From contig NC_043002.1 of NCBI RefSeq assembly GCF_006345805.1, positions 97,092,001 to 97,156,000 on the forward strand: a stretch of DNA of 64,000 bases, written 5' to 3'. The notes beneath the pieces are model-generated. The model made no database searches. It saw only the letters and a list, made by a program, of their open reading frames with translations, and was not told the DNA's origin. Shown piece after piece: positions 779 to 52,905 of the stretch (positions within the stretch are counted from its first letter, which is position 1; each line of letters begins with the position of its first letter). Made by a program: the position numbers and the translations under genes. The stretch comes from Octopus sinensis. Lineage: Eukaryota.

Positions 779-1345
779 AGCACAAGGCCCGAAATTTTGG
801 GGGAGGGGGACAGTCGATTAGATCGACCCAAGTATGCAACTGCTACTTAAGTTATCAACCCCGAAAGGATGAAAGGCAAAGTCGAACTCGGCGGAATTTG
901 AACCCACAACGTAATGACAGACGAAATACCTATTCTTTACCACCCACAAGGGGCTAAACACAGAGGGGACTAACAAGGACAGACAAACGGATTAAGTCGA
1001 TTACAACGACCCCAGTGCGTAACTGGTAATTAATTTCTCGACCCCGAAGGGATGAAAGGCAAAGTCGACCTCGGCGGAATTTGAACTCACAACGCAAAGG
1101 CAGACGAAATACCTATTTCTTTATTACCCACAAGGGGCTAAACATAGAGGGGACAAACAAGGACAGGCATAGGTATTAAGTCGATTACAATCGACCCCAG
1201 TGCGTAACTGGTACTTAATTTATCGACCTCGAAAGGATGAAAGGCAAAGTCGACCTCGGCGGAATTTGAACTCAGAACGTAACATCAGACGAAATACCGC
1301 TAAGCATTTCGCCCGGTGTGCTAACGTTTCTGCCGGCACGTCGCC
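779..1345 (-). mobile_element. Head-to-tail trimer of SINE family C cores
   Basis: Three copies of ACCCCGAAAGGATGAAAGGCAAAGTCGACCTCGGCGGAATTTGAAC at ~180-bp period; tRNA-like head with B box GAGTTCAAATTCC on minus. Confidence 0.85.
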
Positions 1346-2220: not shown

Positions 2221-3322
2221 GTTTCTTTATTAGCCACACAGGGCTGCACACAGATGGGACAAGTTACAAGGCAGAGCTTTTCTTTTGGGGGATGAAAAAA
2301 ACAGAAAACAAAAGAAACAAAAAAAAATGGGTGGCGTAGGTTTTCGATCAAGAGGGATCGTAAAAGGGAAGAAAAGAACAAAACAAAACAAACAAAAAAA
2401 TAAAATAAAAAATAAAAAAGTAGAAATAAAAAAAGAAAAGGAAAAGGAACAAAAGAAAAGAGAAATGAAAAAAGAAGAAAAAAGGGGAAAAAAGGGGAAG
2501 AGGAAAAAAAACGATCAATAGGGATCGTGTATCACAGTGTTATGATATATGGTGTAAAGGGGAAAGCAAGTAAGGTTTATCCGTGGGAAGAAAAGCCTAC
2601 GAAAAAGTCCACGGTAACCTTGGTCAATATTGTTATATGTTACCACATTTGTTTGCAAGTGGGTAACCCTCTGTTTTCAATTTCTGTGTTCATAGGATTA
2701 TGCTCAAGGTGGCTTCGTCATTCATACGTGCCATCCTTGCTACATTCACCCATCTTTTTTTAAAACATTCGCTAGACAAAACTTGCCTCTCTACTCTCAC
2801 TTTCCTTTTCAAGTGGTACTTGAAGAAGTTGATGAGAGATTGACCAGAGAGGAAAGTGTTTGGCTCCAATCCTTTCAGACGCGTCCACCAGATACATTCT
2901 TTCGCCATAGCCACAAGGATGATGAAAATAGCTCTTCCTTCCCGTTTGAAGGAAGGAGGCGTGACAATATTGACGATAGACTCAGCTGATAAACCGACTC
3001 GTCCCACACGTGACAGCAGTTGTTTGACATAAGCCCACAGGTCGGAAATTGTTGGACACTGCACGAGTGCGTGCAGAACGGTTTCGTCGCTCTGACCGCA
3101 TCTCGGGCAGGTCGGCCCCGTGTTTCTCGAGCCGTGTCTGTAGAGCTTATCCCGAACGGGTAGCGCTTCTCGGTAGCACTGCCAGGCCAGGGATCTCTGG
3201 AAGTTGTCCATGGGCCCTGGCCCGAAAGTCGTCCCGAATAGGCGGGTCAGGTACTCCTCGTCGACGTCCAGGTTCGCCCCGAGCTCGTCGTCGTACCTCC
3301 CCTTCACTAATCCCCTATAGAA
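2220..3322 (-). mobile_element. 5'-truncated Tx1/L1-clade LINE (C-terminal zf-RVT region plus 3' UTR)
   Basis: ORF 2690-3322 with CPRCGQSDETVLHALVQC (CCHC zinc finger of L1/Tx1 ORF2); AATAAA just before the 3' end; (GATA)n on both sides. Confidence 0.85.
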
Positions 3323-3335
3323 GATAGATAGATAG

Positions 3336-3389
<54 letters not shown>
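3323..3389. repeat. (GATA)n microsatellite
   Basis: Direct reading. Confidence 0.98.
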
Positions 3390-3390
<1 letters not shown>

Positions 3391-5207
3391 TGAACCCTGT
3401 CTCAAAAATACTAGGGAAGCCACTTAGTACAAATCCTTCCATAACAATTCTCATTATAAAGCTTCTACGTGGCAGATATTTCGATATAAAATAGCTTGGA
3501 ATATGTTTAAATGATTTTTAATGTTCCTCGGACTTATCTCTCTCTCTCTCTCTCCTTCTCTTCTCTCCTTCCCTTTCTCTCTCTCACTGTCTTTCTATCT
3601 GTCTCTCTGTTTGTCTCTCTTGTTAAAGTTGTTGAATAGACATATCTTCTTTATTTGCTACAATTTCCTGGCATTCTTGCAAATATCTTACTGGGTATAT
3701 ACAGCATTTTTATCCAAGACATAAACTCGTTAATATTTCCAATTACTTTGATAAAATGCCTTCAATTATTTGGCTTGACTTTCCACTCCTCACAATTCCT
3801 CATATGGTTGTTGTTGTCGTGTATAGGCTTAAATAAAACATTTGGAGCGTATTTCAGAAGAGCTCTTTGTATAAGGACGCCATAATATACGAACTGGGCG
3901 TAATTTATTTCACTCACATTTCATAACAATTTCTATGCATATTTGCTTGTATTATATGTGTGTATGAGTGTAACTATAAATGTGTATATATGCATGCATG
4001 TGTGTATGCGTGAGTGTGCGTGTGTATGGGCATAATAACGAATCTTACACTTGATTTAACTTCCACTTTACGATATCCCTAAAGATATTTTCATCAATGC
4101 TATAAAGTGTGATATTGATTTTCTGGAGTAAACTTTATGCAGTATGTTCGCGTTGGTCTATTTTGTTATATTCGTTTTCTTGAAAAAAAAGTTCGTAATG
4201 TGTATATCGATTAAATAAATAAGGTGATTAATTTTGACACGGACTACTTTCTTTTTTATTCTAGTCATATTAACAGCTAAATGTTTCAATGGTGAAACAA
4301 AAGTACATTCTAATTACGGAAATCCTACATTTTCGCTAGTTTTTTTTTTAATTATTGCACAAGATTTTATTGGAAAGTTTTGTATGGACTGAAGCTAATG
4401 TTAGAAATTTTTCAATGCAAAACTAGATATTTTAGAGTTTATTTTTAATGCTGCATCCGTGCTTAGATTTAAGAGCCAAGTTTTGTTCTTTGTACTTTTA
4501 ATATGTTGGAGACGTGGTGTGTTGTTAGGGCAAGCAACCTCCACCTTCATAGGTTATTCGGAATCATTGAGTTTATTGCCCTCAATCTTACTCAAACTTT
4601 TCAGCAGGAAGTAGATTCTAGACGATAGATGCTCTGGCGAGGCAACACTGGGTGTAGTGGTGAGAAATGACTGAGCACAACGTGGGGAAAAGACATGAGT
4701 GAGTCATGAGTGCTTGAAAAGAGATGTCATCAATACAGCTTGTTCCGAAAAAAGATCATTGCAGTATAAAAGATAGAGAAAAGAGTTATACAGTTATAAG
4801 CCAAATCTGTGACATATCATTGAGTGATTTTAGCCTATTAATCGAGAGTTCTTCCTTTAAATTTGATCGAGGATGTCAGTGGGCTGCTGCAATATTGTCC
4901 CAGATATGAGAGTATTACTCCATTGTTGTCATCAGTAGCTGATAATGGAGCGACCGGATGGGCCCTAACTGAATGCTACTCAACTTTAAATGAGGTTTAA
5001 CGATGCTTCTGTGAAATGAGATGTGTGCGCTTGAAGACGAAGAGATATTCACATCAGCAGGGAAACTGATCTCTGTGATGGTACGTAATTTTCTTTTCTC
5101 TCCTAAATCACTATATCAGGCCTGTTATGCTTGTACTAAGTAGAAGTTTTCATAGGAAAGCAATAAACCTTATGGTGATACTTATGCATGTATTCCAGTT
5201 CGATGGA

Positions 5208-8239: not shown

Positions 8240-9170
8240 AACAGGTGATATGGGCAAGTGCAGCATTGAGTAAATGGAGTAAATGATAGGCTAATTCGAG
8301 TAAGCAATATGTTATACGTCCGATGGGCTAATTCGTCTAAGCAAGATGCTATGCGTCCGTTTGAAGTATTTCAAGCCCTGGCATGTCATGAAAAATTGGG
8401 GGTGGGGGTTATGTGATTTTGAACGCACCGAAAATTTGTCAGTGGATATACTCTCTTTTGCAGCAGTCGGCACACTGTGTCTAACACAACCCATCATCTG
8501 AAATGTTGGCACGTCCTTCGGGTTTGTTTTCTTACACCATTCATAAAGTAAATTTGGAGGAAGTGTGGTTGTTCGTTTGTGTGTAACAGGGAACCAATGA
8601 GGTGATAGACTTGCTTTTGAACTATAACGTCGGCATAAATTCATGTTTTTCTATCTTCTTAGATGCAGCAAACGATGTCATTTGTAATGCAAAGTTGTAT
8701 TGTCTGATACGGTTCAGAAAATCCTTTGACTGGATGGAAGATCCATAAAACGTTGAGAAAGAGCTGGTAGTGCTGGCAATGTTACCTGACCGCCTGAGCA
8801 GCACATACCATTTGTTTCATTTGAAAATTTTAAAGCTCTACAGAAATGACAATTTTCATTTAGCACAGCAAATTGGACAGTTATCATTTTTATAAGAATG
8901 GGATGGATCATATCTGAAAACAGCTTCAGTAATTGTGAAGAACGAATTTGTATGTAGTCTGTTTCTGAGAGCTATTCTATTGAACATCTCTCTCTAATCA
9001 TTAAAATATTGATTTAATGATCCAGCATTAAGTGCTGCAACATGCACTTGCTGATCTTGAGAAAATCTCATCTCGCTTCTCTCTTCAGACTCTCACCTTC
9101 GATTTTCTACAATCCTCCCTGCTTTATACTTGTTTCTGGAAGAGATTACGTCTTTTCTTTGCTGGCATAT
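8240..9170 (-). mobile_element. Decayed Helitron Rep N-terminal region
   Basis: Frameshifted peptides CHFCRALKFSNETNGMCCSGGQVTLPALP and SKDFLNRIRQYNFALQMTSFAA match conserved Helitron Rep N-terminal motifs. Confidence 0.8.
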
Positions 9171-9701
9171 TTTTTTCAATAGTGTAAACAAAAATTATGA
9201 ACATAGAAAGAAATTATACATTAATCCCTATTTTTGTAAGCTGTTGTATGCATGTAGTAGCTTTTTAATTTTGTTATATTCAGTATAAATAAACCAAATA
9301 GACGCACATGTATGAACTGCTAATTTAACGTTAAATGACACAATAATCATTATAGATAAATTTCTTAATATATATATTTTAACCACATATATTAAATGTT
9401 AATTTAAGGGAAAATATATAACTGTAAATACCTTGCAAGTATGCGATAATTATTAACTGATAATTGAAATGTACATGTGTATTTTTATATACCTTGGACC
9501 TGCAACTTCATTGTTTTTTTGTCAAGAGTTTAATCTCCAGCCGTTCTTTATGTCAGTCAAGACATTCACTGATACAATTCTGTTGTGGTGGCTTATTTTG
9601 TGTTTTTCCTGATGATTCCGTAAAAATTTGCTTGAAGAGAGCAGAAATTGAAAGAAGAGAAAGCGAAAAGGACAGAGAGAAAGAAAGTGAAAGATGTATG
9701 T

Positions 9702-13760: not shown

Positions 13761-14297
13761 AATTACTTCAACAGTGTTTCGGTGAGTGTCTCTATGCAGA
13801 CTCTAGACTTGCTAGAATTAGCAGTCAAATCTTCTTCAAATCACATCCTACTGACCTAAATGCGTAACAAAAAATATGCATTCTATAATGTGGACCTATG
13901 TACCCTTAATATATGTCTGCTCAATCACAAGTTTAATAATCTTAGACTGAAGAATGAATATTGGTTTCAAATTTTGACACAACGCAAACAGTTTCTGAAC
14001 AGCAGGAAAGTCAATTAAGTTGACCCCCACCCCGTGTTAAACTGGTACTATTTTATCGATTCCGAAATATTAGAGGAAAAGCCGACATCAGCGGAGTTTA
14101 GACTCAGATCATGAAGACGAACAAAATGCCGCCAAGCATTGTGTTCAGCGTGCTAAAGAGTCTGTTAGGTCGCCGTCTTAATGAAATATGGGACACTTCA
14201 CGAATTTGCATCATCTTTGTGCAAGGGCTATGCTAATCTGCTCTGAATCCTTCCGATTCCAGAATATGCTCTGCTGAAAAATAAATATTGATTTCAG

Positions 14298-14502
14298 ATT
14301 TGGCACAAGGCCAGAAATTTCGAGGAAGGAGTCGAGTCGATTACATCGACGCAAGTGTTCCAACTGGTACTTCTTTTATCGACATCGAAAGGATGAGAGG
14401 CGAAGTTGACTTCGGCGGAATTTGAACTCTGAACGTAACGCCAGACGAAATACCTGTAAGCATTTTGTCTGTTGTGCTAACGATTCTGCCATCTTGACGC
14501 CT
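14298..14502 (-). mobile_element. SINE family C, diverged
   Basis: GGCACAAGGCCAGAAATTT...GAAAGGATGAGAGGCGAAGTTGACTTCGGCGGAATTTGAAC...GCC. Confidence 0.8.
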
Positions 14503-24334: not shown

Positions 24335-25320
24335 ACCAGTAATTTTGAGGGGAGAGATCAGGTTGATTAGATCGAGCCCCACAACACTTGACTAATGCTT
24401 ATTTTATCGTCCATGAATGAATTAAAGTCGAAGTCGACGTGGGGAAATCTGAACGCCACTACACATTTTGTCCGACGCCGGAATGATTCTACAACGTGTA
24501 ATAATTATTTCTACTGTCGTCGTGACCCTCCGTCGGTTACGACGACGAAAGTTCCAGTTGATCCGATCAACGGAACAGCCTGCTCGGGAAATTAACGTGC
24601 AAGTGGCTGAGCACTCCATAGACACATGTGCCCTTAATGTTGTTGTGGGAGAGATTCAGCGTGACACAGAGTGTGACAAGGCTGGTCCTTTGAAATACAG
24701 AAACAAGAGAAACAAGAACAAAGAGCGAGAGAAAGTTGTGGTAAAAAAGTACAGCAGGGTTCGCCACTACCCCTTGCCGGAGCCTTGTGGGGCTTTAGGT
24801 ATCTCCGCTCATTACACACTCACGACGCCCGGTCTGGGAATCGAAACCACAATCCTACAACCGCAAATCTGCTGCCCTAACCACTGGGCCCCCACCATTC
24901 TACACTGCAGGATGAGGGCTAATTGATTTCATAGACCTCCCCACGCTCCAGTACTCAAATGGTATTTCGTTCATCGACGTCGAAAGGGATGACGGGCAGT
25001 CAACATCGACGGAATTTGAACTCTAAACTCAATGACGGACGAAATGTCGCAAAGCATTTTGTCCGGCGTGCTAACGATTCTGCTAGCTCGCTGCCTTATT
25101 TTAGTTTCAAATTTTCGCGCAAGATCAGCAATTTTGGGAGAGGGAATGAGTAGTTATATCAACCCCTGATCTCGACTGGTGCTTATTATCTGAAACCCGA
25201 ACGGATGAAAGGCAAAGTCGACCTCGGCGGAATACGAACTCAGAACGTAGAGATGAATGAAAAGCCACTCAGTGTTAGGGCTAGGATTCCGGCGTACCAA
25301 AGGAATCTGCCAGCGCGTCA
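24335..25320 (-). mobile_element. Cluster of SINEs: family C fragments (24335-24500, 24905-25095, 25110-25320) and family A copy (24528-24895)
   Basis: The family A copy matches 48008-48397; the family C cores are diverged. Confidence 0.75.
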
Positions 25321-31645: not shown

Positions 31646-31745
31646 NNNNNNNNNNNNNNNNNNNNNNNNNNNNNNNNNNNNNNNNNNNNNNNNNNNNNNN
31701 NNNNNNNNNNNNNNNNNNNNNNNNNNNNNNNNNNNNNNNNNNNNN
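31646..31745. other. Assembly gap (100 N)
   Basis: Exactly 100 N, typical of an unsized scaffold join; contiguity across it is unproven. Confidence 0.99.
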
Positions 31746-31789: not shown

Positions 31790-33461
31790 ATTGACCCTAA
31801 TACATTGCAAGCATCTGTGCAACATTTTTATCACGTTTTCATGGGATTCGAGAACAAGATACTACAGTTTACTTCCTTGATGCTCCTAATGGAACTGGAA
31901 AACCATTCGTGGTCTATATTTTGCTTGCCAAATTTTTATAGTAATAAAACCCAAGCTATTGCAGGTGTCTTTTAAGATATTGTTTTCTACTCTAGCACAA
32001 GGCCCGAAATTTTTTGGGGAGGGGGCTAGTCGATTAGATCGACTCCAGTGCGTAGCTGGTACTTAATTTATCGACCCCGAAAGGAGGAAAAGCAAACTCC
32101 AAACGTAAAGACAGATGAAATACCTATTTCTTTACTACTCACAAGGGGCTAAACACAGAGAGGACAAACAAGGACATACAGACGGATTAAGTCGATTATA
32201 CCGACCCCAGTGCGTAACTGCTACTTAATTTATCGACCCCGAAAGGATGAAAGGCAAAGATGACCTCGGTGAAATTTGAACTTAGAACGTAGCGGCAGAC
32301 GAAATACCACTAAGCATTTCGCTCGGCCTGCTAACGTTTCTGTCAGCTCACCGCCTTTTCAGATATTGTCATCGCATTTCTTCTTGAGGGTTTTATAGCA
32401 TATTGTGCTTTGAAAGTTTCTATTTGACTTGGAAACAATATTTTGCAGCATAGCCAAGTAGTAGAGAAAGATACCTGTCTCTAAGCGATGCTAAATATTG
32501 ATCTAGGATTAATGGAGGCCCTCACCTGCACATTGCAGAACTTGCGAGACGGTAGATCTTAGATGGGTGGAGTTTTAATGATGTCACATGTTTTCTGTCA
32601 GACCATGTTACTGATTCCAAAAGAAATATCTTTTGGAAATCCACGCTTGCAATAAATCGTCATCGCTTTGGATAAAATTTAAAAACTACAAACTCTCTAC
32701 GAACATGAAACAAACGGTCCAGTCTGAGACGGAGAAGATTTTTTCCATCAATATTGGTATCATTACCCCCAGCACCTTTAATATGATTGGTTAAACCTGT
32801 TGATGAATTCTAACGAAAGTGTTCCTCATTCCAAACCGCCATTACACAACACATAATGGCTATGAAAAAGATCTATAACTGCACCCAAATATGCTGTAGT
32901 CACCAGCAATAAGTGGCAACGATTGCATGCGCCGCCAGGAAATAACCACAACTACTATTCAATAGACATTGTTTTGGATCAGACAAGAGGAAATCTTTAT
33001 CCTGTTGAATTTTCAAATTTCTTAGAAACCTTTGGTTTATTATTGTACAATCTTCACCTAGGCAGGGATTCCCAATAACACTTGCGTGATTTAAAACACC
33101 CTCAAGGTAATGCCAGAAAACTAATTGTGAAGAAGCTTACGCCACATGTGATCAAGCCTGCTGTTCTTTGTGGGTGAACCGAGGTAGAAGATGCAATTAT
33201 ATTCAGAATTTTAATCATACTAAGAGGTGTGCCGTTTCGATTGAGAAGAATCCAATTGTTATTACACCTACGCTATTTCATGCCATTAAATACATCTCAA
33301 ATACAAACATTAACAGTTTCTGGTCTGTATCTTCAGGAATTCTGCTTTGTTTATGGCCAATTTATGTAGCATCATTAGGCGCTGGAAAACCCCATAAGCG
33401 TTATATTTATGTTCCTGCTCACAAATACAAAAATGTTGTATATCCTAAAATCGTGCTATGA
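31790..33461 (+). mobile_element. Decayed Helitron PIF1-like helicase region, interrupted by a SINE C dimer (31984-32355)
   Basis: YFLDAPNGTGKPF (Walker A), EALTCTLQNLRDG..MGGV, YPVEFSNFLE, LIVKKLTPHVI, GQFYVA...YKNVVYP; the SINE is flanked by a TSD TTTT(A/C)AGATATTGT at 31970-31983 and 32356-32369. Confidence 0.85.
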
Positions 33462-35782: not shown

Positions 35783-36002
35783 CATATTTCTTTACTACCC
35801 ACAAGGGGCTAAACACAGAGGGGACAAACAAGGACAGACAAACGGATTAAGTCGATTACATCGACCCCAGTGCGTAACTGGTGCTTAATTTATCGACACC
35901 GAAAGGATGAAAGGCAAAGTCGACCTCGGCGGAATTTGAACTCAGACGAAATACTGCTACGCATATCGCCCGGCGTGCTAACGTTTCTGCCAGCTCGCCG
36001 CC
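35783..36002 (-). mobile_element. SINE family C inserted into the R4/Dong remnant
   Basis: 15-bp TSD TGTACTTGGAAGTAT at 35768-35782 and 36003-36017. Confidence 0.9.
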
Positions 36003-42549: not shown

Positions 42550-43257
42550 TCAAGATATACCACAATCATTTTTACCGGGGCGTCCAGATCTTTTGATCTT
42601 CGGTTTACTACCCCTTCTAATTAAGCTTCGACTTCTAAGAAATTTTTTTTTCTCCTCATCTGTGTCGCCTTGTTCTTCTGCAGTGTGATCCAATGACAAA
42701 CGGCGTTTCAGGAACGGTTCCAACTGCCTAACAGAAGGAATATTTGCTTGAATTAAAAGGATACGGAATATATCATTTATACATTCGCCAGTCTTAGCAG
42801 AAACTTCAACAAATTTTCCTTTGAGCCCATCATTATTGACCCAGTCCAATGCGTCAAATTTTTCGATAATACGGTCATTTTCTAAATCAACTTTATTGCC
42901 AACAATGACCACAGGGATCTTTTCATAATCTCGCCTCTCCTCCTTAATTTGATCCCAAAGTTGTTTGACTTCTTTATATGAGGCTTCGTTAGTTATCGTA
43001 TATACCAAAGTAAAAGCATGTGCCGTAGAAATGGATAAACGCCGCATAGCAGGAAATGGAATGTTTCCAGCCGTGTCTAAAATATCAACTTTAATAAGGC
43101 TACCACTGATATCGTACTGTCGGCAGAACAAATCTTCAACAGTTTCGTGGTATTCGGATGTAAAGGCCCCGAACAGAAATCGTTTAATGATGCTACTTTT
43201 ACCCACCCCACCGGCTCCTAGAACCACAACACGGTGCCGTTGGTCAGTGTCATTCAT
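42550..43257 (-). CDS. RASD/DIRAS-like (Rhes/Dexras-type) small GTPase, 235 aa, intronless CDS
   Basis: G1 GAGGVGKS, G2 ETVED, G3 DTAGN followed by PFPAMRRLSI (RASD/DIRAS signature, Q61 replaced), G4 NKVD, G5 SAK, polybasic tail and CaaX CGIS; intact ORF. Exact orthology is not resolvable by eye. Confidence 0.93.
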   Translation of the reverse strand: MNDTDQRHRVVVLGAGGVGKSSIIKRFLFGAFTSEYHETVEDLFCRQYDISGSLIKVDILDTAGNIPFPAMRRLSISTAHAFTLVYTITNEASYKEVKQLWDQIKEERRDYEKIPVVIVGNKVDLENDRIIEKFDALDWVNNDGLKGKFVEVSAKTGECINDIFRILLIQANIPSVRQLEPFLKRRLSLDHTAEEQGDTDEEKKKFLRSRSLIRRGSKPKIKRSGRPGKNDCGIS

Positions 43258-43917: not shown

Positions 43918-43946
43918 TATATATATATATATATATGCATACTTAT

Positions 43947-43995
<49 letters not shown>

Positions 43996-44006
43996 TATAT
44001 ATATAT
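43918..44006. repeat. (TA)n microsatellite, left flank of the ribozyme array
   Basis: Direct reading. Confidence 0.95.
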
Positions 44007-44258
44007 AAGTTTAACATTAAGGATAATCTCTTAATAAGGGATCTTAACAAGAAATTATCGGGTAGCTAGCGTGAAAACCTCATAAAAGAAAAGAATCCGA
44101 AAATAATTTTTTTCTTTTGAACAAATTAATTATATCTATATTGTATAGAGGGCATTATTACACATAAATGCCTCACACTAGGAGGGACAAAGTCATTACT
44201 ACCAAAAATTATACTAATCATACCCAAATGCAGTTTTTCAAAGCAAGACATTAAAAAT

Positions 44259-44327
44259 GAATTATGTTCTGTATCACCGTGATTTCACATACAACTTGCG
44301 TCTAATGATCGTCAGCAGAACTGATTC
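44259..44327 (-). ncRNA. Type I hammerhead ribozyme, copy L1 (predicted cleavage 3' of 44272 on minus)
   Basis: GAAU-CA-GUUCUG CUGACGA UCAU UA GAC GCAA GUU GU AUGU GAAA UCAC G GUGA UA CAGAAC AUA AUUC. Confidence 0.8.
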
Positions 44328-44736
44328 TGAATACATCATAAATAAACTACCAACCTTACGTAGCGGAGACGAACAGACAACTGCTCACTCCGGCCAAGCA
44401 CATGGAATGTTTATAAATCATATATCCGGTAAATGGCGGGCTTTTTACGAACTGCATGTCGGGTAATGAAAAGTATTTCGGAATAAGTTTAACAATTAAG
44501 GATAATCTCTTAATAAGGGATCTTAACAAGAAATTATCGGGTAGCTAGCGTGAAAACCTCATAAAAGAAAAGAATCCGAAAATAATTTTTTCTTTTGAAC
44601 AAATTAATTATATCTATATTGTATAGAGGGCATTATTACACATAAATGCCTCACACTAGGAGGGACAAAGTCATTACTACCAAAAATTATACTAATCATA
44701 CCCAAATGCAGTTTTTCAAAGCAAGACATTAAAAAT

Positions 44737-44805
44737 GAATTATGTTCTGTATCACCGTGATTTCACATACAACTTGCGTCTAATGATCGTCAGCAGAACT
44801 GATTC
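44737..44805 (-). ncRNA. Type I hammerhead ribozyme, copy L2 (predicted cleavage 3' of 44750 on minus)
   Basis: Identical to L1, 478 bp away. Confidence 0.8.
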
Positions 44806-45488
44806 TGAATACATCATAAATAAACTACCAACCTTACGTAGCGGAGACGAACAGACAACTGCTCACTCCGGCCAAGCACATGGAATGTTTATAAATCATA
44901 TATCCGGTAAATGGCGGGCTTTTTACGAACTGCATGTCGGGTAATGAAAAGTATTTCGGAATAAGTTTAACAATTAAGGATAATCTCTTAATAAGGGATC
45001 TTAACAAGAAATTATCGGGTAGCTAGCGTGAAAACCTCATAAAAGAAAAGAATCCGAAAATAATTTTTTTCTTTTGAACAAATTAATTATATCTATATTG
45101 TATAGAGGGCATTATTACACATAAATGCCTCACACTAGGAGGGACAAAGTCATTACTACCAAAAATTATACTAATTTGTAATAATGCCCTCTATACAATA
45201 TAGATATAATTAATTTGTTCAAAAGAAAAAAATATTTTCGGATTCTTTTCTTTATGAGGTTTTCACGCTAGCTACCCGATAATTTCTTGTTAAGATCCCT
45301 TATTAAGAGATTATCCTTAATTGTTAAACTTATTCCGAAATACTTTTCATTACCCGACATGCAGTTCGTAAAAAGCCCGCCATTTACCGGATATATGATT
45401 TATAAACATTCCATGTGCTTGGCCGGAGTGAGCAGTTGTCTGTTCGTCTCCGCTACGTAAGGTTGGTAGTTTATTTATGATGTATTCA

Positions 45489-45557
45489 GAATCAGTTCTG
45501 CTGACGATCATTAGACGCAAGTTGTATGTGAAATCACGGTGATACAGAACATAATTC
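45489..45557 (+). ncRNA. Type I hammerhead ribozyme, copy R1 (predicted cleavage after 45544)
   Basis: Stem I 45495-45500/45545-45550, core CTGACGA 45501-45507, GAAA 45530-45533, AUA triplet 45542-45544. Confidence 0.8.
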
Positions 45558-45966
45558 ATTTTTAAATGTCTTGCTTTGAAAAACTGCATTTGGGTATGAT
45601 TAGTATAATTTTTGGTAGTAATGACTTTGTCCCTCCTAGTGTGAGGCATTTATGTGTAATAATGCCCTCTATACAATATAGATATAATTAATTTGTTCAA
45701 AAGAAAAAAATATTTTCGGATTCTTTTCTTTATGAGGTTTTCACGCTAGCTACCCGATAATTTCTTGTTAAGATCCCTTATTAAGAGATTATCCTTAATT
45801 GTTAAACTTATTCCGAAATACTTTTCATTACCCGACATGCAGTTCGTAAAAAGCCCGCCATTTACCGGATATATGATTTATAAACATTCCATGTGCTTGG
45901 CCGGAGTGAGCAGTTGTCTGTTCGTCTCCGCTACGTAAGGTTGGTAGTTTATTTATGATGTATTCA

Positions 45967-46035
45967 GAATCAGTTCTGCTGACGATCATTAGACGCAAGT
46001 TGTATGTGAAATCACGGTGATACAGAACATAATTC
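45967..46035 (+). ncRNA. Type I hammerhead ribozyme, copy R2 (predicted cleavage after 46022)
   Basis: Identical to R1, +478. Confidence 0.8.
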
Positions 46036-46445
46036 ATTTTTAAATGTCTTGCTTTGAAAAACTGCATTTGGGTATGATTAGTATAATTTTTGGTAGTAAT
46101 GACTTTGTCCCTCCTAGTGTGAGGCATTTATGTGTAATAATGCCCTCTATACAATATAGATATAATTAATTTGTTCAAAAGAAAAAAATTATTTTCGGAT
46201 TCTTTTCTTTTATGAGGTTTTCACGCTAGCTACCCGATAATTTCTTGTTAAGATCCCTTATTAAGAGATTATCCTTAATTGTTAAACTTATTCCGAAATA
46301 CTTTTCATTACCCGACATGCAGTTCGTAAAAAGCCCGCCATTTACCGGATATATGATTTATAAACATTCCATGTGCTTGGCCGGAGTGAGCAGTTGTCTG
46401 TTCGTCTCCGCTACGTAAGTTGGTAGTTTATTTATGATGTATTCA

Positions 46446-46514
46446 GAATCAGTTCTGCTGACGATCATTAGACGCAAGTTGTATGTGAAATCACGGTGAT
46501 ACAGAACATAATTC
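46446..46514 (+). ncRNA. Type I hammerhead ribozyme, copy R3 (predicted cleavage after 46501)
   Basis: Identical to R1, +479 from R2. Confidence 0.8.
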
Positions 46515-46923
46515 ATTTTTAAATGTCTTGCTTTGAAAAACTGCATTTGGGTATGATTAGTATAATTTTTGGTAGTAATGACTTTGTCCCTCCTAGTGTG
46601 AGGCATTTATGTGTAATAATGCCCTCTATACAATATAGATATAATTAATTTGTTCAAAAGAAAAAAATTATTTTCGGATTCTTTTCTTTTGAGGTTTTCA
46701 CGCTAGCTACCCGATAATTTCTTGTTAAGATCCCTTATTAAGAGATTATCCTTAATTGTTAAACTTATTCCGAAATACTTTTCATTACCCGACATGCAGT
46801 TCGTAAAAAGCCCGCCATTTACCGGATATATGATTTATAAACATTCCATGTGCTTGGCCGGAGTGAGCAGTTGTCTGTTCGTCTCCGCTACGTAAGGTTG
46901 GTAGTTTATTTATGATGTATTCA

Positions 46924-46992
46924 GAATCAGTTCTGCTGACGATCATTAGACGCAAGTTGTATGTGAAATCACGGTGATACAGAACATAATTC
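46924..46992 (+). ncRNA. Type I hammerhead ribozyme, copy R4 (predicted cleavage after 46979)
   Basis: Identical to R1, +478 from R3. Confidence 0.8.
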
Positions 46993-47403
46993 ATTTTTAA
47001 ATGTCTTGCTTTGAAAAACTGCATTTGGGTATGATTAGTATAATTTTTGGTAGTAATGACTTTGTCCCTCCTAGTGTGAGGCATTTATGTGTAATAATGC
47101 CCTCTATACAATATAGATATAATTAATTTGTTCAAAAGAAAAAAATTATTTTCGGATTCTTTTCTTTTATGAGGTTTTCACGCTAGCTACCCGATAATTT
47201 CTTGTTAAGATCCCTTATTAAGAGATTATCCTTAATTGTTAAACTTATTCCGAAATACTTTTCATTACCCGACATGCAGTTCGTAAAAAGCCCGCCATTT
47301 ACCGGATATATGATTTATAAACATTCCATGTGCTTGGCCGGAGTGAGCAGTTGTCTGTTCGTCTCCGCTACGTAAGGTTGGTAGTTTATTTATGATGTAT
47401 TCA

Positions 47404-47472
47404 GAATCAGTTCTGCTGACGATCATTAGACGCAAGTTGTATGTGAAATCACGGTGATACAGAACATAATTC
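47404..47472 (+). ncRNA. Type I hammerhead ribozyme, copy R5 (predicted cleavage after 47459)
   Basis: Identical to R1, +480 from R4. Confidence 0.8.
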
Positions 47473-47594
47473 ATTTTTAAATGTCTTGCTTTGAAAAACT
47501 GCATTTGGGTATGATTAGTATAATTTTTGGTAGTAATGACTTTGTCCCTCCTAGTGTGAGGCATTTATGTGTAATAATGCCCTCTATACAATAT

Positions 47595-47634
<40 letters not shown>

Positions 47635-48007
47635 TATTGTATATGAGGTGATACAATATACTAAAGATGCTACGGTACATAATTAGCTTTTTAAAAATTT
47701 TATTGTGTAAAAAAACGAGATTTTAAATTTTTGAGAAACAAGGATAAATACATTTATTGTACGACCTTTCCGGTTTCGCATTTGTGCCTTATTTAACACA
47801 CTCACCGGTTCGATTTCCACTCATTTACTTAATTATTTTCTCTGAAATTTTCCTTGCGTCTTGCAACCTTTTCAATAGAAGTATGTATATTGGGAAACGT
47901 TTTCAATATGCAAATGAAGTTTCTATTCCATTATGCCGGCCTTCGTCTAATGATGTTGACTAGTGAACCAGTTTATAAGCGTTGTACCGATATAACGTAC
48001 GATGAAT

Positions 48008-48397
48008 GGATGGAAGCACTCCGTCGGTTACGACGATGAGGGTTCCGGTTGATCCGAATCAACAGAACAGCCTGCTCGTAAAATTAACGTGTAAGTGGCT
48101 GAGCACTCCACAGACACGTGTACCCTTAACGTAGTTCTCGGGGATATTCAGCGTGACACAGAGAGTGACAAGGCCGGCCCTTTGAAATACAGGTACAACA
48201 GAAACAGGAAGTAAGAGTGAGAGAAAGTTGTGGTGAAAGAGTACAGCAGGGATCACCACCATCCCTGCCGGAGCCTCGTGGAGCTTTAGGTGTTTTCGCT
48301 CAATAAACACTCACAACGCCCGGTCTGGGAATCGAAACCGCGATCCTACGACCGCGAGTCCGCTGCCCTAACCACTGGGCCATTGCGCCTCCACAAT
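48008..48397 (-). mobile_element. tRNA-derived SINE family A, full length
   Basis: Head GGAGGCGCAATGGCCCAGTGGTTAGGGCAGCG...GGTTTCGATTCCC (A and B boxes); 11-bp TSD GTACGATGAAT at 47997-48007 and 48398-48408. Confidence 0.9.
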
Positions 48398-52699: not shown

Positions 52700-52905
52700 T
52701 TATAGGCACAAGGCCTGAAATTTTGGGGGGAAGGGAATAGACGATTTCATCGATCCCAGTACTTAACTGGTACTTATTTAATCAACCCCGAAAGGATAAA
52801 AAGGCAAATTCGACCTCGGCGGAATTTGAACTCAGAACGTAACGGCAGACGAAATACCGCTAATCATTCCGTCGGACGTGCTAACGTTTCTGCCAGCTCG
52901 CCGCC
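52700..52905 (-). mobile_element. SINE family C, full length
   Basis: AGGCACAAGGCC...GAAAGGATAAAAAGGCAAATTCGACCTCGGCGGAATTTGAACTC...GCTCGCCGCC. Confidence 0.9.

What the first reader, a model, noticed from the sequence alone, without database searches (positions are those of the whole stretch)
44007..47600. Tandem 478-bp unit with one complete type I hammerhead ribozyme per copy: a retrozyme-like, self-cleaving RNA system in an octopus genome
Seen: ~7.5 near-identical units, and 7 identical 69-nt motifs (minus 44259, 44737; plus 45489, 45967, 46446, 46924, 47404). Each folds as GAAU-CA-GUUCUG / CUGACGA / UCAU-UA-GAC-GCAA-GUU-GU-AUGU / GAAA / UCAC-G-GUGA / UA / CAGAAC-AUA-AUUC. That gives a perfect 6-bp stem I continued after a CA/AUA internal loop, an invariant CUGANGA and GAAA core, a GNRA-capped stem II, a palindromic stem III and an AUA (NUH) cleavage triplet. 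Established: tandem type I hammerheads spaced by a few hundred nt are the architecture of newt satellite 2, Schistosoma Sm-alpha, Dolichopoda pDo500 and animal non-LTR retrozymes, whose transcripts self-cleave to monomers that can circularise. Palindromic short stem III favours dimeric (tandem) cleavage. Inference: transcription would release 478-480-nt monomers, possibly circular RNA. I know of no description of this family in cephalopods, but I could not search.
Basis: partly seen in the sequence, partly recalled or inferred. Interest (0 to 1): 0.95.

Follow-up and report, generated by a model that had tools for sequence, protein, structure and literature searches.

The report
Octopus hammerhead retrozyme array, recently inserted
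A 3.6-kb block of 478-bp repeats in the Octopus sinensis genome, each repeat carrying a probable self-cutting "hammerhead" RNA, belongs to a known class of mobile elements (animal retrozymes) and was caught as a very recent insertion into a TA microsatellite that is still empty in two sister species.

Summary
Window 44005-47601 holds about 7.5 near-identical 478-480-bp units and seven identical 69-nt motifs at the stated coordinates. Each motif fits a type I hammerhead: CUGACGA and GAAA core, A15.1-U16.1, H17 = A, a 6-bp helix I and a GCAA-capped helix II.

The 10.1/11.1 position is a U·U mismatch, not a pair. The array is two head-to-head arms (2.4 copies on the minus strand, 5.1 on the plus strand).

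Rfam Hammerhead_1 scores only 14.4 bits against a gathering score of 34, and my own covariance model is not significant. A pairing descriptor that recovers 4 of 4 validated retrozyme ribozymes expects about 5e-6 chance hits per unit. The active axolotl HHR_Amex2 has the same U·U.

The window is O. sinensis. The orthologous site in O. vulgaris is an uninterrupted (TA)n tract, and O. bimaculoides also lacks the array. The copies show no substitutions, so the array is about 0.16 My old or less.

Tandem plus inverted 5'-truncated arms in a (TA)n target match Penelope-like-element insertions.

Verdict: a new cephalopod member of the non-LTR retrozymes. Self-cleavage and circular RNA are inferred, not shown. 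The insertion snapshot is the most interesting part.

The parts
43918..44004 (.). Left half of the (TA)n microsatellite that was the insertion target
   Evidence: TRF reports a period-2 array at 43918-44007. In O. vulgaris the same flanks enclose one uninterrupted (TA)n tract.
44005..45175 (-). Left arm: 2.45 units in minus orientation. Its 3' end (unit position 267) is at 44005 and its 5'-truncated end (unit position 55) is at the internal junction, 45175.
44259..44327 (-). Hammerhead motif copy (69 nt); predicted cleavage between 44272 and 44271 on the minus strand
44737..44805 (-). Hammerhead motif copy (69 nt); predicted cleavage between 44750 and 44749 on the minus strand
45176..45176 (.). 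Head-to-head junction: a single T between the two 5'-truncated arms. The arms are offset by 56 nt of the unit, so this is not a symmetric palindrome.
45177..47601 (+). Right arm: 5.07 units in plus orientation. Its 5'-truncated start (unit position about 111) is at the junction and its 3' end (unit position 142) is at 47601.
45489..45557 (+). Hammerhead motif copy; predicted cleavage after 45544
   Evidence: Rfam RF00163 aligns to 45495-45550 at 14.4 bits.
45967..46035 (+). Hammerhead motif copy; predicted cleavage after 46022
46446..46514 (+). Hammerhead motif copy; predicted cleavage after 46501
46924..46992 (+). Hammerhead motif copy; predicted cleavage after 46979
47404..47472 (+). Hammerhead motif copy; predicted cleavage after 47459
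47602..47637 (.). Right half of the target (TA)n microsatellite
   Evidence: TRF reports 47591-47637. Empty-site comparison.

Best explanation
This is a non-LTR (animal-type) retrozyme of Octopus sinensis: a non-coding, non-autonomous retroelement with a 478-nt unit that carries one type I hammerhead ribozyme. The proposed life cycle, with the basis for each step, is as follows. (i) A multimeric transcript of the plus polarity is made (inferred). (ii) Each hammerhead cuts after GUGAUA. It probably works best as a double hammerhead, in which two neighbouring motifs share a 10-bp intermolecular helix III, because the lone helix III hairpin is marginal. The structure is computed; cleavage is inferred. 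(iii) The 478-nt monomers, which are strongly self-paired, are ligated into circles by a host ligase (inferred from published retrozymes). (iv) A reverse transcriptase from an autonomous element, most likely a Penelope-like element, copies the circular or multimeric RNA by target-primed reverse transcription at a nicked (TA)n microsatellite. What is shown directly is the outcome. A 3.6-kb block lies inside a (TA)n tract that is uninterrupted in O. vulgaris. The block consists of two head-to-head, 5'-truncated multimeric arms. Their 3' ends abut the TA repeats at two different unit positions with 3-5 nt of TA microhomology. This is the pattern expected if both target DNA ends primed cDNA synthesis (twin priming) on a template with no fixed 3' end. 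The insertion is younger than the sinensis/vulgaris split, and probably younger than about 0.16 My.
For: Array and motifs are confirmed. The hammerhead core, three helices and H17 are present in all 7 copies, and these are the only descriptor hits in 64 kb. The chance rate is 5e-6 per unit. The same descriptor recovers 4 of 4 experimentally active retrozyme hammerheads, all of which have a 6-bp helix I like this one. U·U at 10.1/11.1, H17 = A and a quasi-palindromic helix III are shared with axolotl HHR_Amex2, which cleaves 22% per hour as a monomer and efficiently as a dimer (PMC7229834). Cofolding of two motifs yields the double hammerhead at -32.3 kcal/mol against -21.2 for two monomers. 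The helix III hairpin is worth -0.2 and the duplex -13.9 kcal/mol. The unit has 34% GC. The circular monomer folds with z = -6.6 on the hammerhead strand and -3.9 on the antisense strand, and the hammerhead forms a separate branch. The unit has no coding capacity: its ORFs have no homologues and no Pfam hits. No second ribozyme or other Rfam family is present. The site is empty in O. vulgaris and O. bimaculoides, with 94% identical flanks up to both edges. Copies differ by 7 small indel variants, all outside the hammerhead, and by no substitutions, while the flanks diverge by 2.55%. PLE insertions are described as tandem/inverted with an inverted 5'-truncated copy and a (TA)n bias (PMC8557442). 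O. vulgaris has 336 recently active PLE insertions (PMC13282606). The published retrozyme model is a target-primed circRNA copied into tandem cDNA (PMC7229834 Discussion).
Against: Rfam Hammerhead_1 is far below its gathering score (14.4 against 34 bits). It is invisible in whole-window searches and aligns only helix I plus CUGACGA. A covariance model built from 4 validated retrozyme hammerheads gives 9.3 bits, E about 2.7, which is within the window's background. The 69-mer is no more stable than its shuffles (z = +0.56), and its MFE is not the hammerhead fold, although the same is true of the validated controls. The usual G10.1-C11.1 pair is replaced by U·U. Helix II carries an internal loop and an extra hairpin, unlike the four validated retrozyme hammerheads compared here. 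There are no diverged copies, so there is no covariation or conservation evidence. There are no RNA data. No PLE lies in the window. About 28 motifs of this quality are expected by chance in a genome of about 2.7 Gb, so the argument depends on the tandem context. The insertion and the inversion rest on one long-read assembly, and the indel-only differences look like assembly noise.
Confidence: 0.55

Rival explanations
1. This is an ordinary minisatellite or satellite whose unit happens to contain a hammerhead-like string. The RNA, if made at all, does not self-cleave.
For: Both covariance-model tests fail. There is a U·U at 10.1/11.1, and helix III is thermodynamically marginal (pair probability 0.05-0.08). 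The motif fold has z = +0.56. About 28 chance motifs are expected per genome. There is no conservation or expression evidence.
Against: The chance of such a motif in one 478-bp unit is about 5e-6. All core nucleotides are intact, and the architecture (6-bp helix I, 4-layer helix II base, quasi-palindromic helix III, H17 = A) matches experimentally active retrozyme ribozymes, including one with the same U·U. The monomer has strand-biased, strong structure. The block behaves as a mobile insertion with retroelement-type anatomy rather than as a locally grown satellite.
Confidence: 0.12
2. The unit is a genuine retrozyme-type repeat, but this copy arrived by a DNA-level event rather than by reverse transcription. 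Examples are capture of a piece of another array during repair of a break in the fragile (TA)n tract, or fold-back / template-switch replication that produced the inverted arms.
For: (TA)n tracts are known to be break-prone and hairpin-forming (general knowledge). Inverted duplications with short microhomology (a 1-nt or 'AT' junction) are also typical of replication template switching. There is no target-site duplication, poly(A) tail or other unambiguous TPRT signature.
Against: The combination of a (TA)n target, tandem copies and an upstream inverted 5'-truncated copy is what is described for PLE-mediated insertions (PMC8557442). Both arms have their 3' ends outward and their 5' truncations inward, as twin priming predicts. 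Recently active PLEs exist in the sister species.
Confidence: 0.15
3. The array, or at least its inverted arm and copy number, is an artefact of the O. sinensis long-read assembly.
For: It is seen in a single assembly. All differences between copies are 1-2-nt indels, most in short A/T runs, which look like long-read consensus errors. Palindromic chimeras are a known long-read artefact (general knowledge).
Against: Both flanks are collinear with O. vulgaris right up to the TA tract. The junction is asymmetric: the arms are offset by 56 nt of the unit, with a clean 1-nt junction. A missed-adapter chimera would instead give a symmetric palindrome. The array is embedded in a chromosome-scale scaffold.
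Confidence: 0.07
4. The block is a fragment of an autonomous Penelope-like element (a tandem of its pseudo-LTRs) rather than an independent non-autonomous retrozyme family.
For: PLE pLTRs carry type I hammerheads and occur as tandem/inverted structures in (TA)n. A 2026 preprint finds that vertebrate retrozymes are sister to PLE pLTRs.
Against: There is no RT or GIY-YIG coding sequence in the 3.6 kb or anywhere in the window. PLE hammerheads are usually minimal and lack helix III (PMC6155905), whereas this one has a 4-bp helix III and a long helix II. 7.5 uniform 478-bp units with nothing else present is the retrozyme pattern, not the pLTR-ORF-pLTR pattern.
Confidence: 0.1

Closest known systems
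Non-LTR retrozymes of invertebrates (for example Mytilus galloprovincialis Mg353 and Acropora millepora Amil224; Cervera & de la Peña 2020, PMC7229834)
   Same: Tandem low-GC repeats of a few hundred bp, non-coding, with one type I hammerhead per unit. Helix I is 6 bp, helix III is short and quasi-palindromic, and the monomer RNA is highly self-paired with the hammerhead free as a separate branch. PLEs coexist in the genome or lineage.
   Different: The unit (478 bp) is longer than the usual 170-400 nt. The 10.1/11.1 position is U·U instead of G-C. Helix II is 22 nt, with an internal loop and a GCAA-capped extension, instead of a 13-14-nt hairpin. There is no sequence similarity to the mussel element. 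RNA expression and circularity have not been shown.
Axolotl HHR_Amex2 / Rtz_353 retrozyme (PMC7229834)
   Same: An identical core arrangement, CUGANGA-U-[helix II]-U-GAAA, with a U·U mismatch at the base of helix II. H17 = A. Helix III is built on a CACG(G)UG quasi-palindrome. The computed dimer stabilisation is comparable (-10.5 against -11.1 kcal/mol). That ribozyme is experimentally active, weakly as a monomer and efficiently as a dimer.
   Different: It is a vertebrate element with a 350-bp unit and about 60,000 copies, helix II is a simple 3-bp hairpin, and the rest of the unit shows no similarity. The resemblance is probably convergent.
Newt satellite 2, Schistosoma Sm-alpha and Dolichopoda pDo500 hammerhead satellites
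   Same: Tandem type I hammerheads. Newt satellite 2 cleaves as a dimer through an extended helix III (PMC6155905). The assignment of these repeats to this architecture is from general knowledge.
   Different: They are different sequence families. Those motifs pass the canonical descriptors (G10.1-C11.1 and conserved loop-loop contacts); this one does not.
Penelope-like element insertions (Craig et al. 2021, PMC8557442)
   Same: The insertion anatomy matches: partial tandems, an upstream inverted 5'-truncated copy and a preference for (TA)n microsatellites. Both carry a type I hammerhead.
   Different: There is no RT/GIY-YIG ORF. The hammerhead is full-sized rather than minimal. The repeat unit is far shorter than a PLE.
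L1 twin-priming inversions (general knowledge)
   Same: Two cDNA segments in opposite orientation with 3' ends outward, 5' truncations at an internal junction and microhomology at that junction.
   Different: The retroelement class is different. Here each arm is a multimer of a short unit, which implies a circular or concatemeric template.

Membership tests
Hammerhead ribozyme, type I | Conserved catalytic core: C3-U4-G5-A6-N7-G8-A9, G12-A13-A14, the A15.1-U16.1 pair, and H17 (not G) before the cleavage site | tested here: met
   CUGACGA ... GAAA ... U-A|C is present in all 7 copies.
Hammerhead ribozyme, type I | Three helices around the core, with helix I open-ended and helices II and III closed | tested here: met
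   The descriptor match has helix I 6 bp (+4 bp after a CA/AUA loop), helix II 3+3 bp and helix III 4 bp. Ensemble pair probabilities are 0.86-0.97 for helix I, 0.39-0.77 for helix II and 0.05-0.08 for helix III.
Hammerhead ribozyme, type I | Watson-Crick pair at 10.1-11.1 (normally G-C) closing helix II on the core | tested here: not met
   The position is U·U. A strict descriptor gives 0 hits in the window. The active axolotl HHR_Amex2 has the same U·U.
Hammerhead ribozyme, type I | Score at or above the gathering threshold of Rfam RF00163 (34 bits) | tested here: not met
   No hit at gathering or at E<=10 on 3.8 kb. The score is 14.4 bits, E = 0.56, when only 111 nt are searched, and helices II and III are skipped. 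My own model from 4 validated retrozyme hammerheads gives 9.3 bits, E = 2.7.
Hammerhead ribozyme, type I | Covariation or conservation of helices I-III among diverged copies | tested here: inconclusive
   All 7 copies are identical within the motif. No relatives were retrievable.
Hammerhead ribozyme, type I | Loop 1 - loop 2 tertiary contacts | not testable with these tools
   Internal loops lie 6 bp up helix I (CA/AUA) and 4 layers up helix II (UA/GU). The spacing of the helix I loop matches the 6-bp helix I of the validated motifs. Any contact between the two loops is conjecture.
Hammerhead ribozyme, type I | Site-specific, Mg2+-dependent self-cleavage | not testable with these tools
   This needs in-vitro transcription.
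Non-LTR (animal) retrozyme | Tandem repeat with at least 2 consecutive units that each carry a complete type I hammerhead with motif MFE < -5 kcal/mol (operational definition of Li et al. 2026) | tested here: met
   TRF arrays of 2.4 and 5.1 copies. There are 2 + 5 consecutive motifs. MFE is -10.6 kcal/mol. Whether their rnabob descriptor tolerates the U·U is unknown.
Non-LTR (animal) retrozyme | Unit of a few hundred bp (about 150-450) with low GC (<45%) | tested here: met
   Units are 478-480 bp, slightly above the usual range, with 34.1% GC.
Non-LTR (animal) retrozyme | No protein-coding capacity, no LTRs, PBS or PPT | tested here: met
   ORFs are at most 99 aa, with no homologues or Pfam hits. 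The array consists of uniform tandem units only.
Non-LTR (animal) retrozyme | Monomer RNA predicted to be highly self-paired, with the hammerhead free to fold | tested here: met
   The circular MFE is -125.5 kcal/mol, z = -6.6, with 67% of bases paired. The hammerhead domain forms a separate branch closed by helix I.
Non-LTR (animal) retrozyme | Mobility: presence/absence at orthologous sites | tested here: met
   The site is filled in O. sinensis and empty in O. vulgaris and O. bimaculoides.
Non-LTR (animal) retrozyme | Expression as linear and circular monomer RNA | not testable with these tools
   No transcriptome access.
Non-LTR (animal) retrozyme | Multi-copy family dispersed in the genome, coexisting with autonomous PLEs | tested here: inconclusive
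   There is only one locus in the 64-kb window and none in the 20-kb orthologous loci. The window holds no PLE. The literature reports PLEs, including 336 recently active insertions, in O. vulgaris.
Penelope-like element (autonomous) | ORF encoding a reverse transcriptase and a GIY-YIG endonuclease | tested here: not met
   No such ORF lies in the array or the window.
Penelope-like element (insertion signature only) | Tandem/inverted structure with an inverted 5'-truncated copy, and a (TA)n target | tested here: met
   compared with the description in PMC8557442.

The most novel reading that the evidence does not exclude
The locus is a fresh (about 0.16 My old or less) 'before/after' snapshot of how an animal retrozyme array is born. 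A circular or concatemeric hammerhead RNA was reverse-transcribed from both ends of a break in a (TA)n microsatellite (twin priming, rolling-circle cDNA synthesis, PLE-type target choice). The array therefore arrived as a 7.5-mer in one event rather than growing from a monomer by local amplification. That would be direct genomic evidence for the hypothesised retrozyme integration mechanism and for PLEs as the mobiliser, in a lineage (cephalopods) where the family has not been described. The ribozyme would also be a non-canonical hammerhead variant (U·U at 10.1/11.1 and an extended helix II).
Probability: 0.35. Interest if true: 0.62.

Novelty: new member of a known kind. Interest (0 to 1): 0.45.

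Why it matters
Animal retrozymes are a recently recognised class of mobile elements that produce abundant small circular RNAs. How they integrate, and which enzyme moves them, is still hypothesis. This octopus locus extends the class to cephalopods, as far as the searchable literature shows. It also offers a clean filled-versus-empty comparison between species that split 2.5 My ago, which is rare for this class. The anatomy of the insertion makes the 'target-primed circRNA, PLE-mobilised' model testable genome-wide in octopuses. That anatomy is a (TA)n target, two inverted multimeric arms with outward 3' ends at different unit positions, and no substitutions between copies. The ribozyme falls below Rfam's threshold, which suggests that covariance-model annotation undercounts such elements. 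The array lies 748 bp upstream of a conserved Ras-family GTPase ORF, so it could matter for regulation of that gene in O. sinensis; this is speculative.

Tried and rejected
1. Rfam at gathering threshold on the whole window, and at E<=10 on 3.8 kb, gave no hammerhead. Only a 111-nt search revealed a sub-threshold Hammerhead_1 alignment.
2. I used the 99-aa antisense ORF and the 57-aa ORF of the unit as handles to pull other copies or transcripts from protein-indexed assemblies. There were no homologues and no exact records.
3. A degenerate DNA pattern (this element's helix I plus the core) scanned against the metagenome, viral and GTDB collections gave 97 loci. All are chance matches: none is similar to the unit by BLAST and none forms both helices II and III. 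These collections do not hold animal genomes, so the negative result says nothing about octopus.
4. A covariance model built from 4 validated retrozyme hammerheads scores the octopus motif at 9.3 bits, E = 2.7, no better than background. The training set is too small and too sequence-specific, so I treat this as unsupportive rather than as evidence against.
5. MFE folding of the isolated motif does not give the hammerhead (z = +0.56). I do not count this against the motif, because none of the four validated controls folds as a hammerhead in its MFE either.
6. I looked for a second ribozyme of opposite polarity, a tRNA/SINE-like head, or an autonomous partner in the window. None was found.
7. 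I considered a missed-adapter palindrome artefact. I think it unlikely because the junction is asymmetric, but this is not excluded without reads.
8. I considered reading the 'TATAGATATA' in the left flank as a target-site duplication. I rejected this as unproven, because a single T>G change in the microsatellite explains it equally well.

Full report
**1. Checking the observation**

The region was read directly. Tandem Repeats Finder reports two abutting arrays of period 478 at 99% identity: 44005-45175 (2.4 copies) and 45177-47601 (5.1 copies).

Two copies are on the minus strand (44259, 44737) and five on the plus strand (45489, 45967, 46446, 46924, 47404). Shuffled windows give none.

The predicted cleavage sites GUGAUA|CAGAAC fall after 45544, 46022, 46501, 46979 and 47459. 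They delimit monomers of 478, 479, 478 and 480 nt. BLAST of the unit against the rest of the window finds no other copy.

- The array is not one head-to-tail run. It is two head-to-head inverted arms.
- It is flanked on both sides by (TA)n (43918-44007 and 47591-47637).

**2. Is the motif a hammerhead?**

Laid on the standard hammerhead numbering, the motif reads as follows:
- Helix I: GUUCUG/CAGAAC, 6 bp, extended by GAAU/AUUC after a CA/AUA internal loop.
- Core: C3-A9 = CUGACGA, and G12-A14 = GAA.
- Helix III: A15.1-U16.1 closes a 4-bp helix (A-U, U-A, C-G, A-U) with a 3-nt loop.
- Cleavage: H17 = A, followed by C1.1.
- Helix II: CAU/AUG, a 2x2 internal loop UA/GU, then GAC/GUU capped by GCAA.

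This is the position next to the core that is normally a G-C pair.

*Evidence for the motif*
- A descriptor I wrote (core, three helices, H17, one mismatch allowed at 10.1/11.1) finds only these seven sites in the 64 kb. It finds none if 10.1-11.1 must pair.
- Importance-sampled simulation with the window's dinucleotide composition gives 6.7e-4 hits of the observed quality per 64-kb window and 5e-6 per 478-bp unit. It also gives about 28 per genome, taking the genome as about 2.7 Gb. The motif alone would therefore not be significant genome-wide. Its occurrence once per unit of a tandem repeat is.
- The same descriptor recovers all four experimentally validated retrozyme hammerheads printed in Supplementary Table 2 of PMC7229834 (coral, mussel and two axolotl). 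All four have a 6-bp helix I, like this motif.

*Evidence against the motif*
- Rfam reports no hammerhead at gathering threshold or at E<=10 on 3.8 kb.
- When only 111 nt are searched, Hammerhead_1 (RF00163) aligns end to end at 45495-45550. It scores 14.4 bits against a gathering score of 34 and skips helices II and III.
- A covariance model I built from the four validated ribozymes scores the octopus motif at 9.3 bits, E about 2.7, inside the window's background.
- The isolated 69-mer is no more stable than shuffles (z = +0.56), and its MFE is not the hammerhead. The hammerhead fold evaluates to -9.0 kcal/mol against an MFE of -10.6. Pair probabilities are about 0.97 for helix I, 0.4-0.77 for helix II and 0.05-0.08 for helix III. 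None of the four validated controls has the hammerhead as its MFE either, so this last point carries little weight.

[quoted passage not shown] It self-cleaves 22% in one hour as a monomer and much more efficiently as a dimer (PMC7229834). Its sequence is CUGAUGA-U-GCC...GGC-U-GAAA-CACGUG-UA|U. The octopus motif is CUGACGA-U-CAU...AUG-U-GAAA-UCACGGUGA-UA|C.

*Dimer model.* Cofolding two octopus motifs spontaneously gives the double hammerhead, with a 10-bp intermolecular helix III containing one G·G mismatch. The energy is -32.3 kcal/mol against -21.2 for two monomers. The helix III hairpin is worth -0.2 kcal/mol and the duplex -13.9. The gain of -11.1 kcal/mol compares with -6.6 to -10.5 in the validated ribozymes.

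**3. The unit as an RNA**

- The unit has 34.1% GC.
- As a circle, the hammerhead-strand monomer folds to -125.5 kcal/mol (z = -6.6, 67% paired). The antisense strand gives z = -3.9.
- Helix I and its extension close off the hammerhead as a separate branch. PMC7229834 reports the same for most metazoan retrozyme circles.
- ORFs in the unit are at most 99 aa and have no homologues, no Pfam hits and no exact records.
- No other Rfam family and no ribozyme of opposite polarity is present.

**4. Where it comes from: filled and empty sites**

The intact Ras-family GTPase ORF lies at 42550-43257 on the minus strand (Pfam PF00071), and the array starts 748 bp from its ATG. I used this ORF to fetch the locus from public assemblies.
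- The window is identical to GCA_006345805.1, chromosome CM016864.1. That assembly is Octopus sinensis.
- The other two assemblies are O. vulgaris (GCA_951406725) and O. bimaculoides (GCA_001194135.2). They split from O. sinensis about 2.5 and about 34 Mya respectively (PMC10700109).
- Neither carries any copy of the unit within 10 kb of the gene.
- In O. vulgaris the flanks align at 94% right up to both edges of the array. Between them lies one uninterrupted (TA)n tract followed by (TATG)n.
- O. bimaculoides has a degenerate TA/TG-rich stretch and no array.

The 3.6-kb block is therefore a lineage-specific insertion into a (TA)n microsatellite.

**5. Anatomy of the insertion**

In unit coordinates (position 1 = the C after the cleavage site):
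- The left arm runs from its 5' end at unit 55 (window 45175) to its 3' end at unit 267 (window 44005).
- The right arm runs from unit position about 111 (window 45177) to unit 142 (window 47601).
- A single T (45176) separates the arms.

Both 5'-truncated ends thus meet head to head and both 3' ends point outward. The 3' ends join the TA repeats at different unit positions, with TA microhomology...GAUAUA|(TA)n and ...CUUAU|(AT)n.

The copies differ by seven 1-2-nt indel variants, most in short A/T runs. There are no substitutions, and no difference falls in the hammerhead. The flanks show 2.55% substitution divergence between the two species over 16.6 kb. Zero substitutions in 3.6 kb then bound the age, or the last homogenisation, at about 0.16 My (a rough inference).

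**6. Comparison with what is known**

[quoted passage not shown] It proposes that a target-primed circRNA is copied by a reverse transcriptase into tandem cDNA, with PLEs as the likely mobiliser.
- A 2026 preprint gives an operational definition that this locus meets: a TRF repeat with at least 2 consecutive units carrying a complete type I hammerhead, MFE < -5. It also links vertebrate retrozymes phylogenetically to PLE pseudo-LTRs.
- PMC8557442 describes PLE insertions as 'complex tandem/inverted insertions' with 'an inverted 5'-truncated copy' upstream, and an insertion bias for (TA)n microsatellites. It notes PLE families in Octopus spp..
- PMC13282606 lists 336 recently active Penelope-like insertions from 31 families in O. 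vulgaris.

The octopus locus therefore matches the retrozyme definition and shows the PLE-type insertion signature, although the window itself holds no PLE.

**7. Novelty**

Full-text searches for hammerhead or retrozyme together with octopus or cephalopod found no description of such an element in octopus. The giant squid genome paper merely counts 235 Rfam Hammerhead_1 loci (PMC6962438).

This is a new member of a known kind, not a new kind. Three things are unusual:
- the non-canonical ribozyme (U·U at 10.1/11.1, an extended helix II, and a score below Rfam's threshold);
- the slightly long unit;
- above all, the clean filled/empty comparison and the twin-arm structure, which bear on how retrozyme arrays are created.

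**8. Limits**

- No diverged copies, no RNA data and no sequencing reads were accessible.
- Self-cleavage, circularisation, the identity of the mobiliser and the circular nature of the template are inferences.
- The inverted junction and the copy number rest on one long-read assembly.

I put about 0.55 on the full retrozyme reading, that is, an active hammerhead and an insertion made by retrotransposition. A DNA-level origin for this copy (0.15) also assumes a genuine retrozyme-type unit.

Noticed in passing
window 14182-14282 (-) and 14335-14455: There is a U6 snRNA-like sequence (Rfam RF00026, 62.7 bits, E = 2e-13). Directly beside it lies a copy of an interspersed element of about 183 bp. 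This may be an snRNA-derived ('U'-type) SINE such as those listed for O. vulgaris in PMC13282606, rather than a functional U6 gene.
   Followed up: no
window 812-1298; also 32028-32308, 35788-35944, 52739-52858, 25175-25249: An element of about 183 bp is present as a 2.7-copy tandem and as dispersed copies at 72-97% identity across the window. It looks like a SINE-like repeat family.
   Followed up: partly
window 42550-43257 (-): An intact single-exon ORF of 235 aa encodes a Ras-family small GTPase (Pfam PF00071, E = 2e-39) ending in a CAAX-like CGIS. The protein is identical in O. sinensis, O. vulgaris and O. bimaculoides. The retrozyme array starts 748 bp upstream of its ATG in O. sinensis only, so a species-specific regulatory effect is conceivable.
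   Followed up: partly
window 43990-43999: 'TATAGATATA' inside the left (TA)n flank is identical to the last 10 nt of the right arm (unit 133-142). It is absent from the O. vulgaris TA tract. It could be a single T>G change in the microsatellite or a scrap of element sequence left by the integration.
   Followed up: no
window 2690-3454 (-): An ORF of 254 aa has a zf-RVT domain (PF13966, E = 3e-8). It is the C-terminal fragment of a LINE-type reverse transcriptase, not a Penelope-like element.
   Followed up: partly
window 47980-48320 and 24528-24829: An interspersed repeat lies immediately to the right of the array, with an 86% identical copy 23 kb away. It is also present in the O. vulgaris flank, so it predates the insertion and is not part of it.
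   Followed up: partly
window 31646-31745: A run of exactly 100 N marks an assembly gap.
   Followed up: no
L098 (O. bimaculoides) 9080-9370: At the orthologous position O. bimaculoides has a long (CA)n tract plus about 150 bp of unrelated sequence where O. sinensis and O. vulgaris have (TA)n. The microsatellite region is evolving quickly between species.
   Followed up: no
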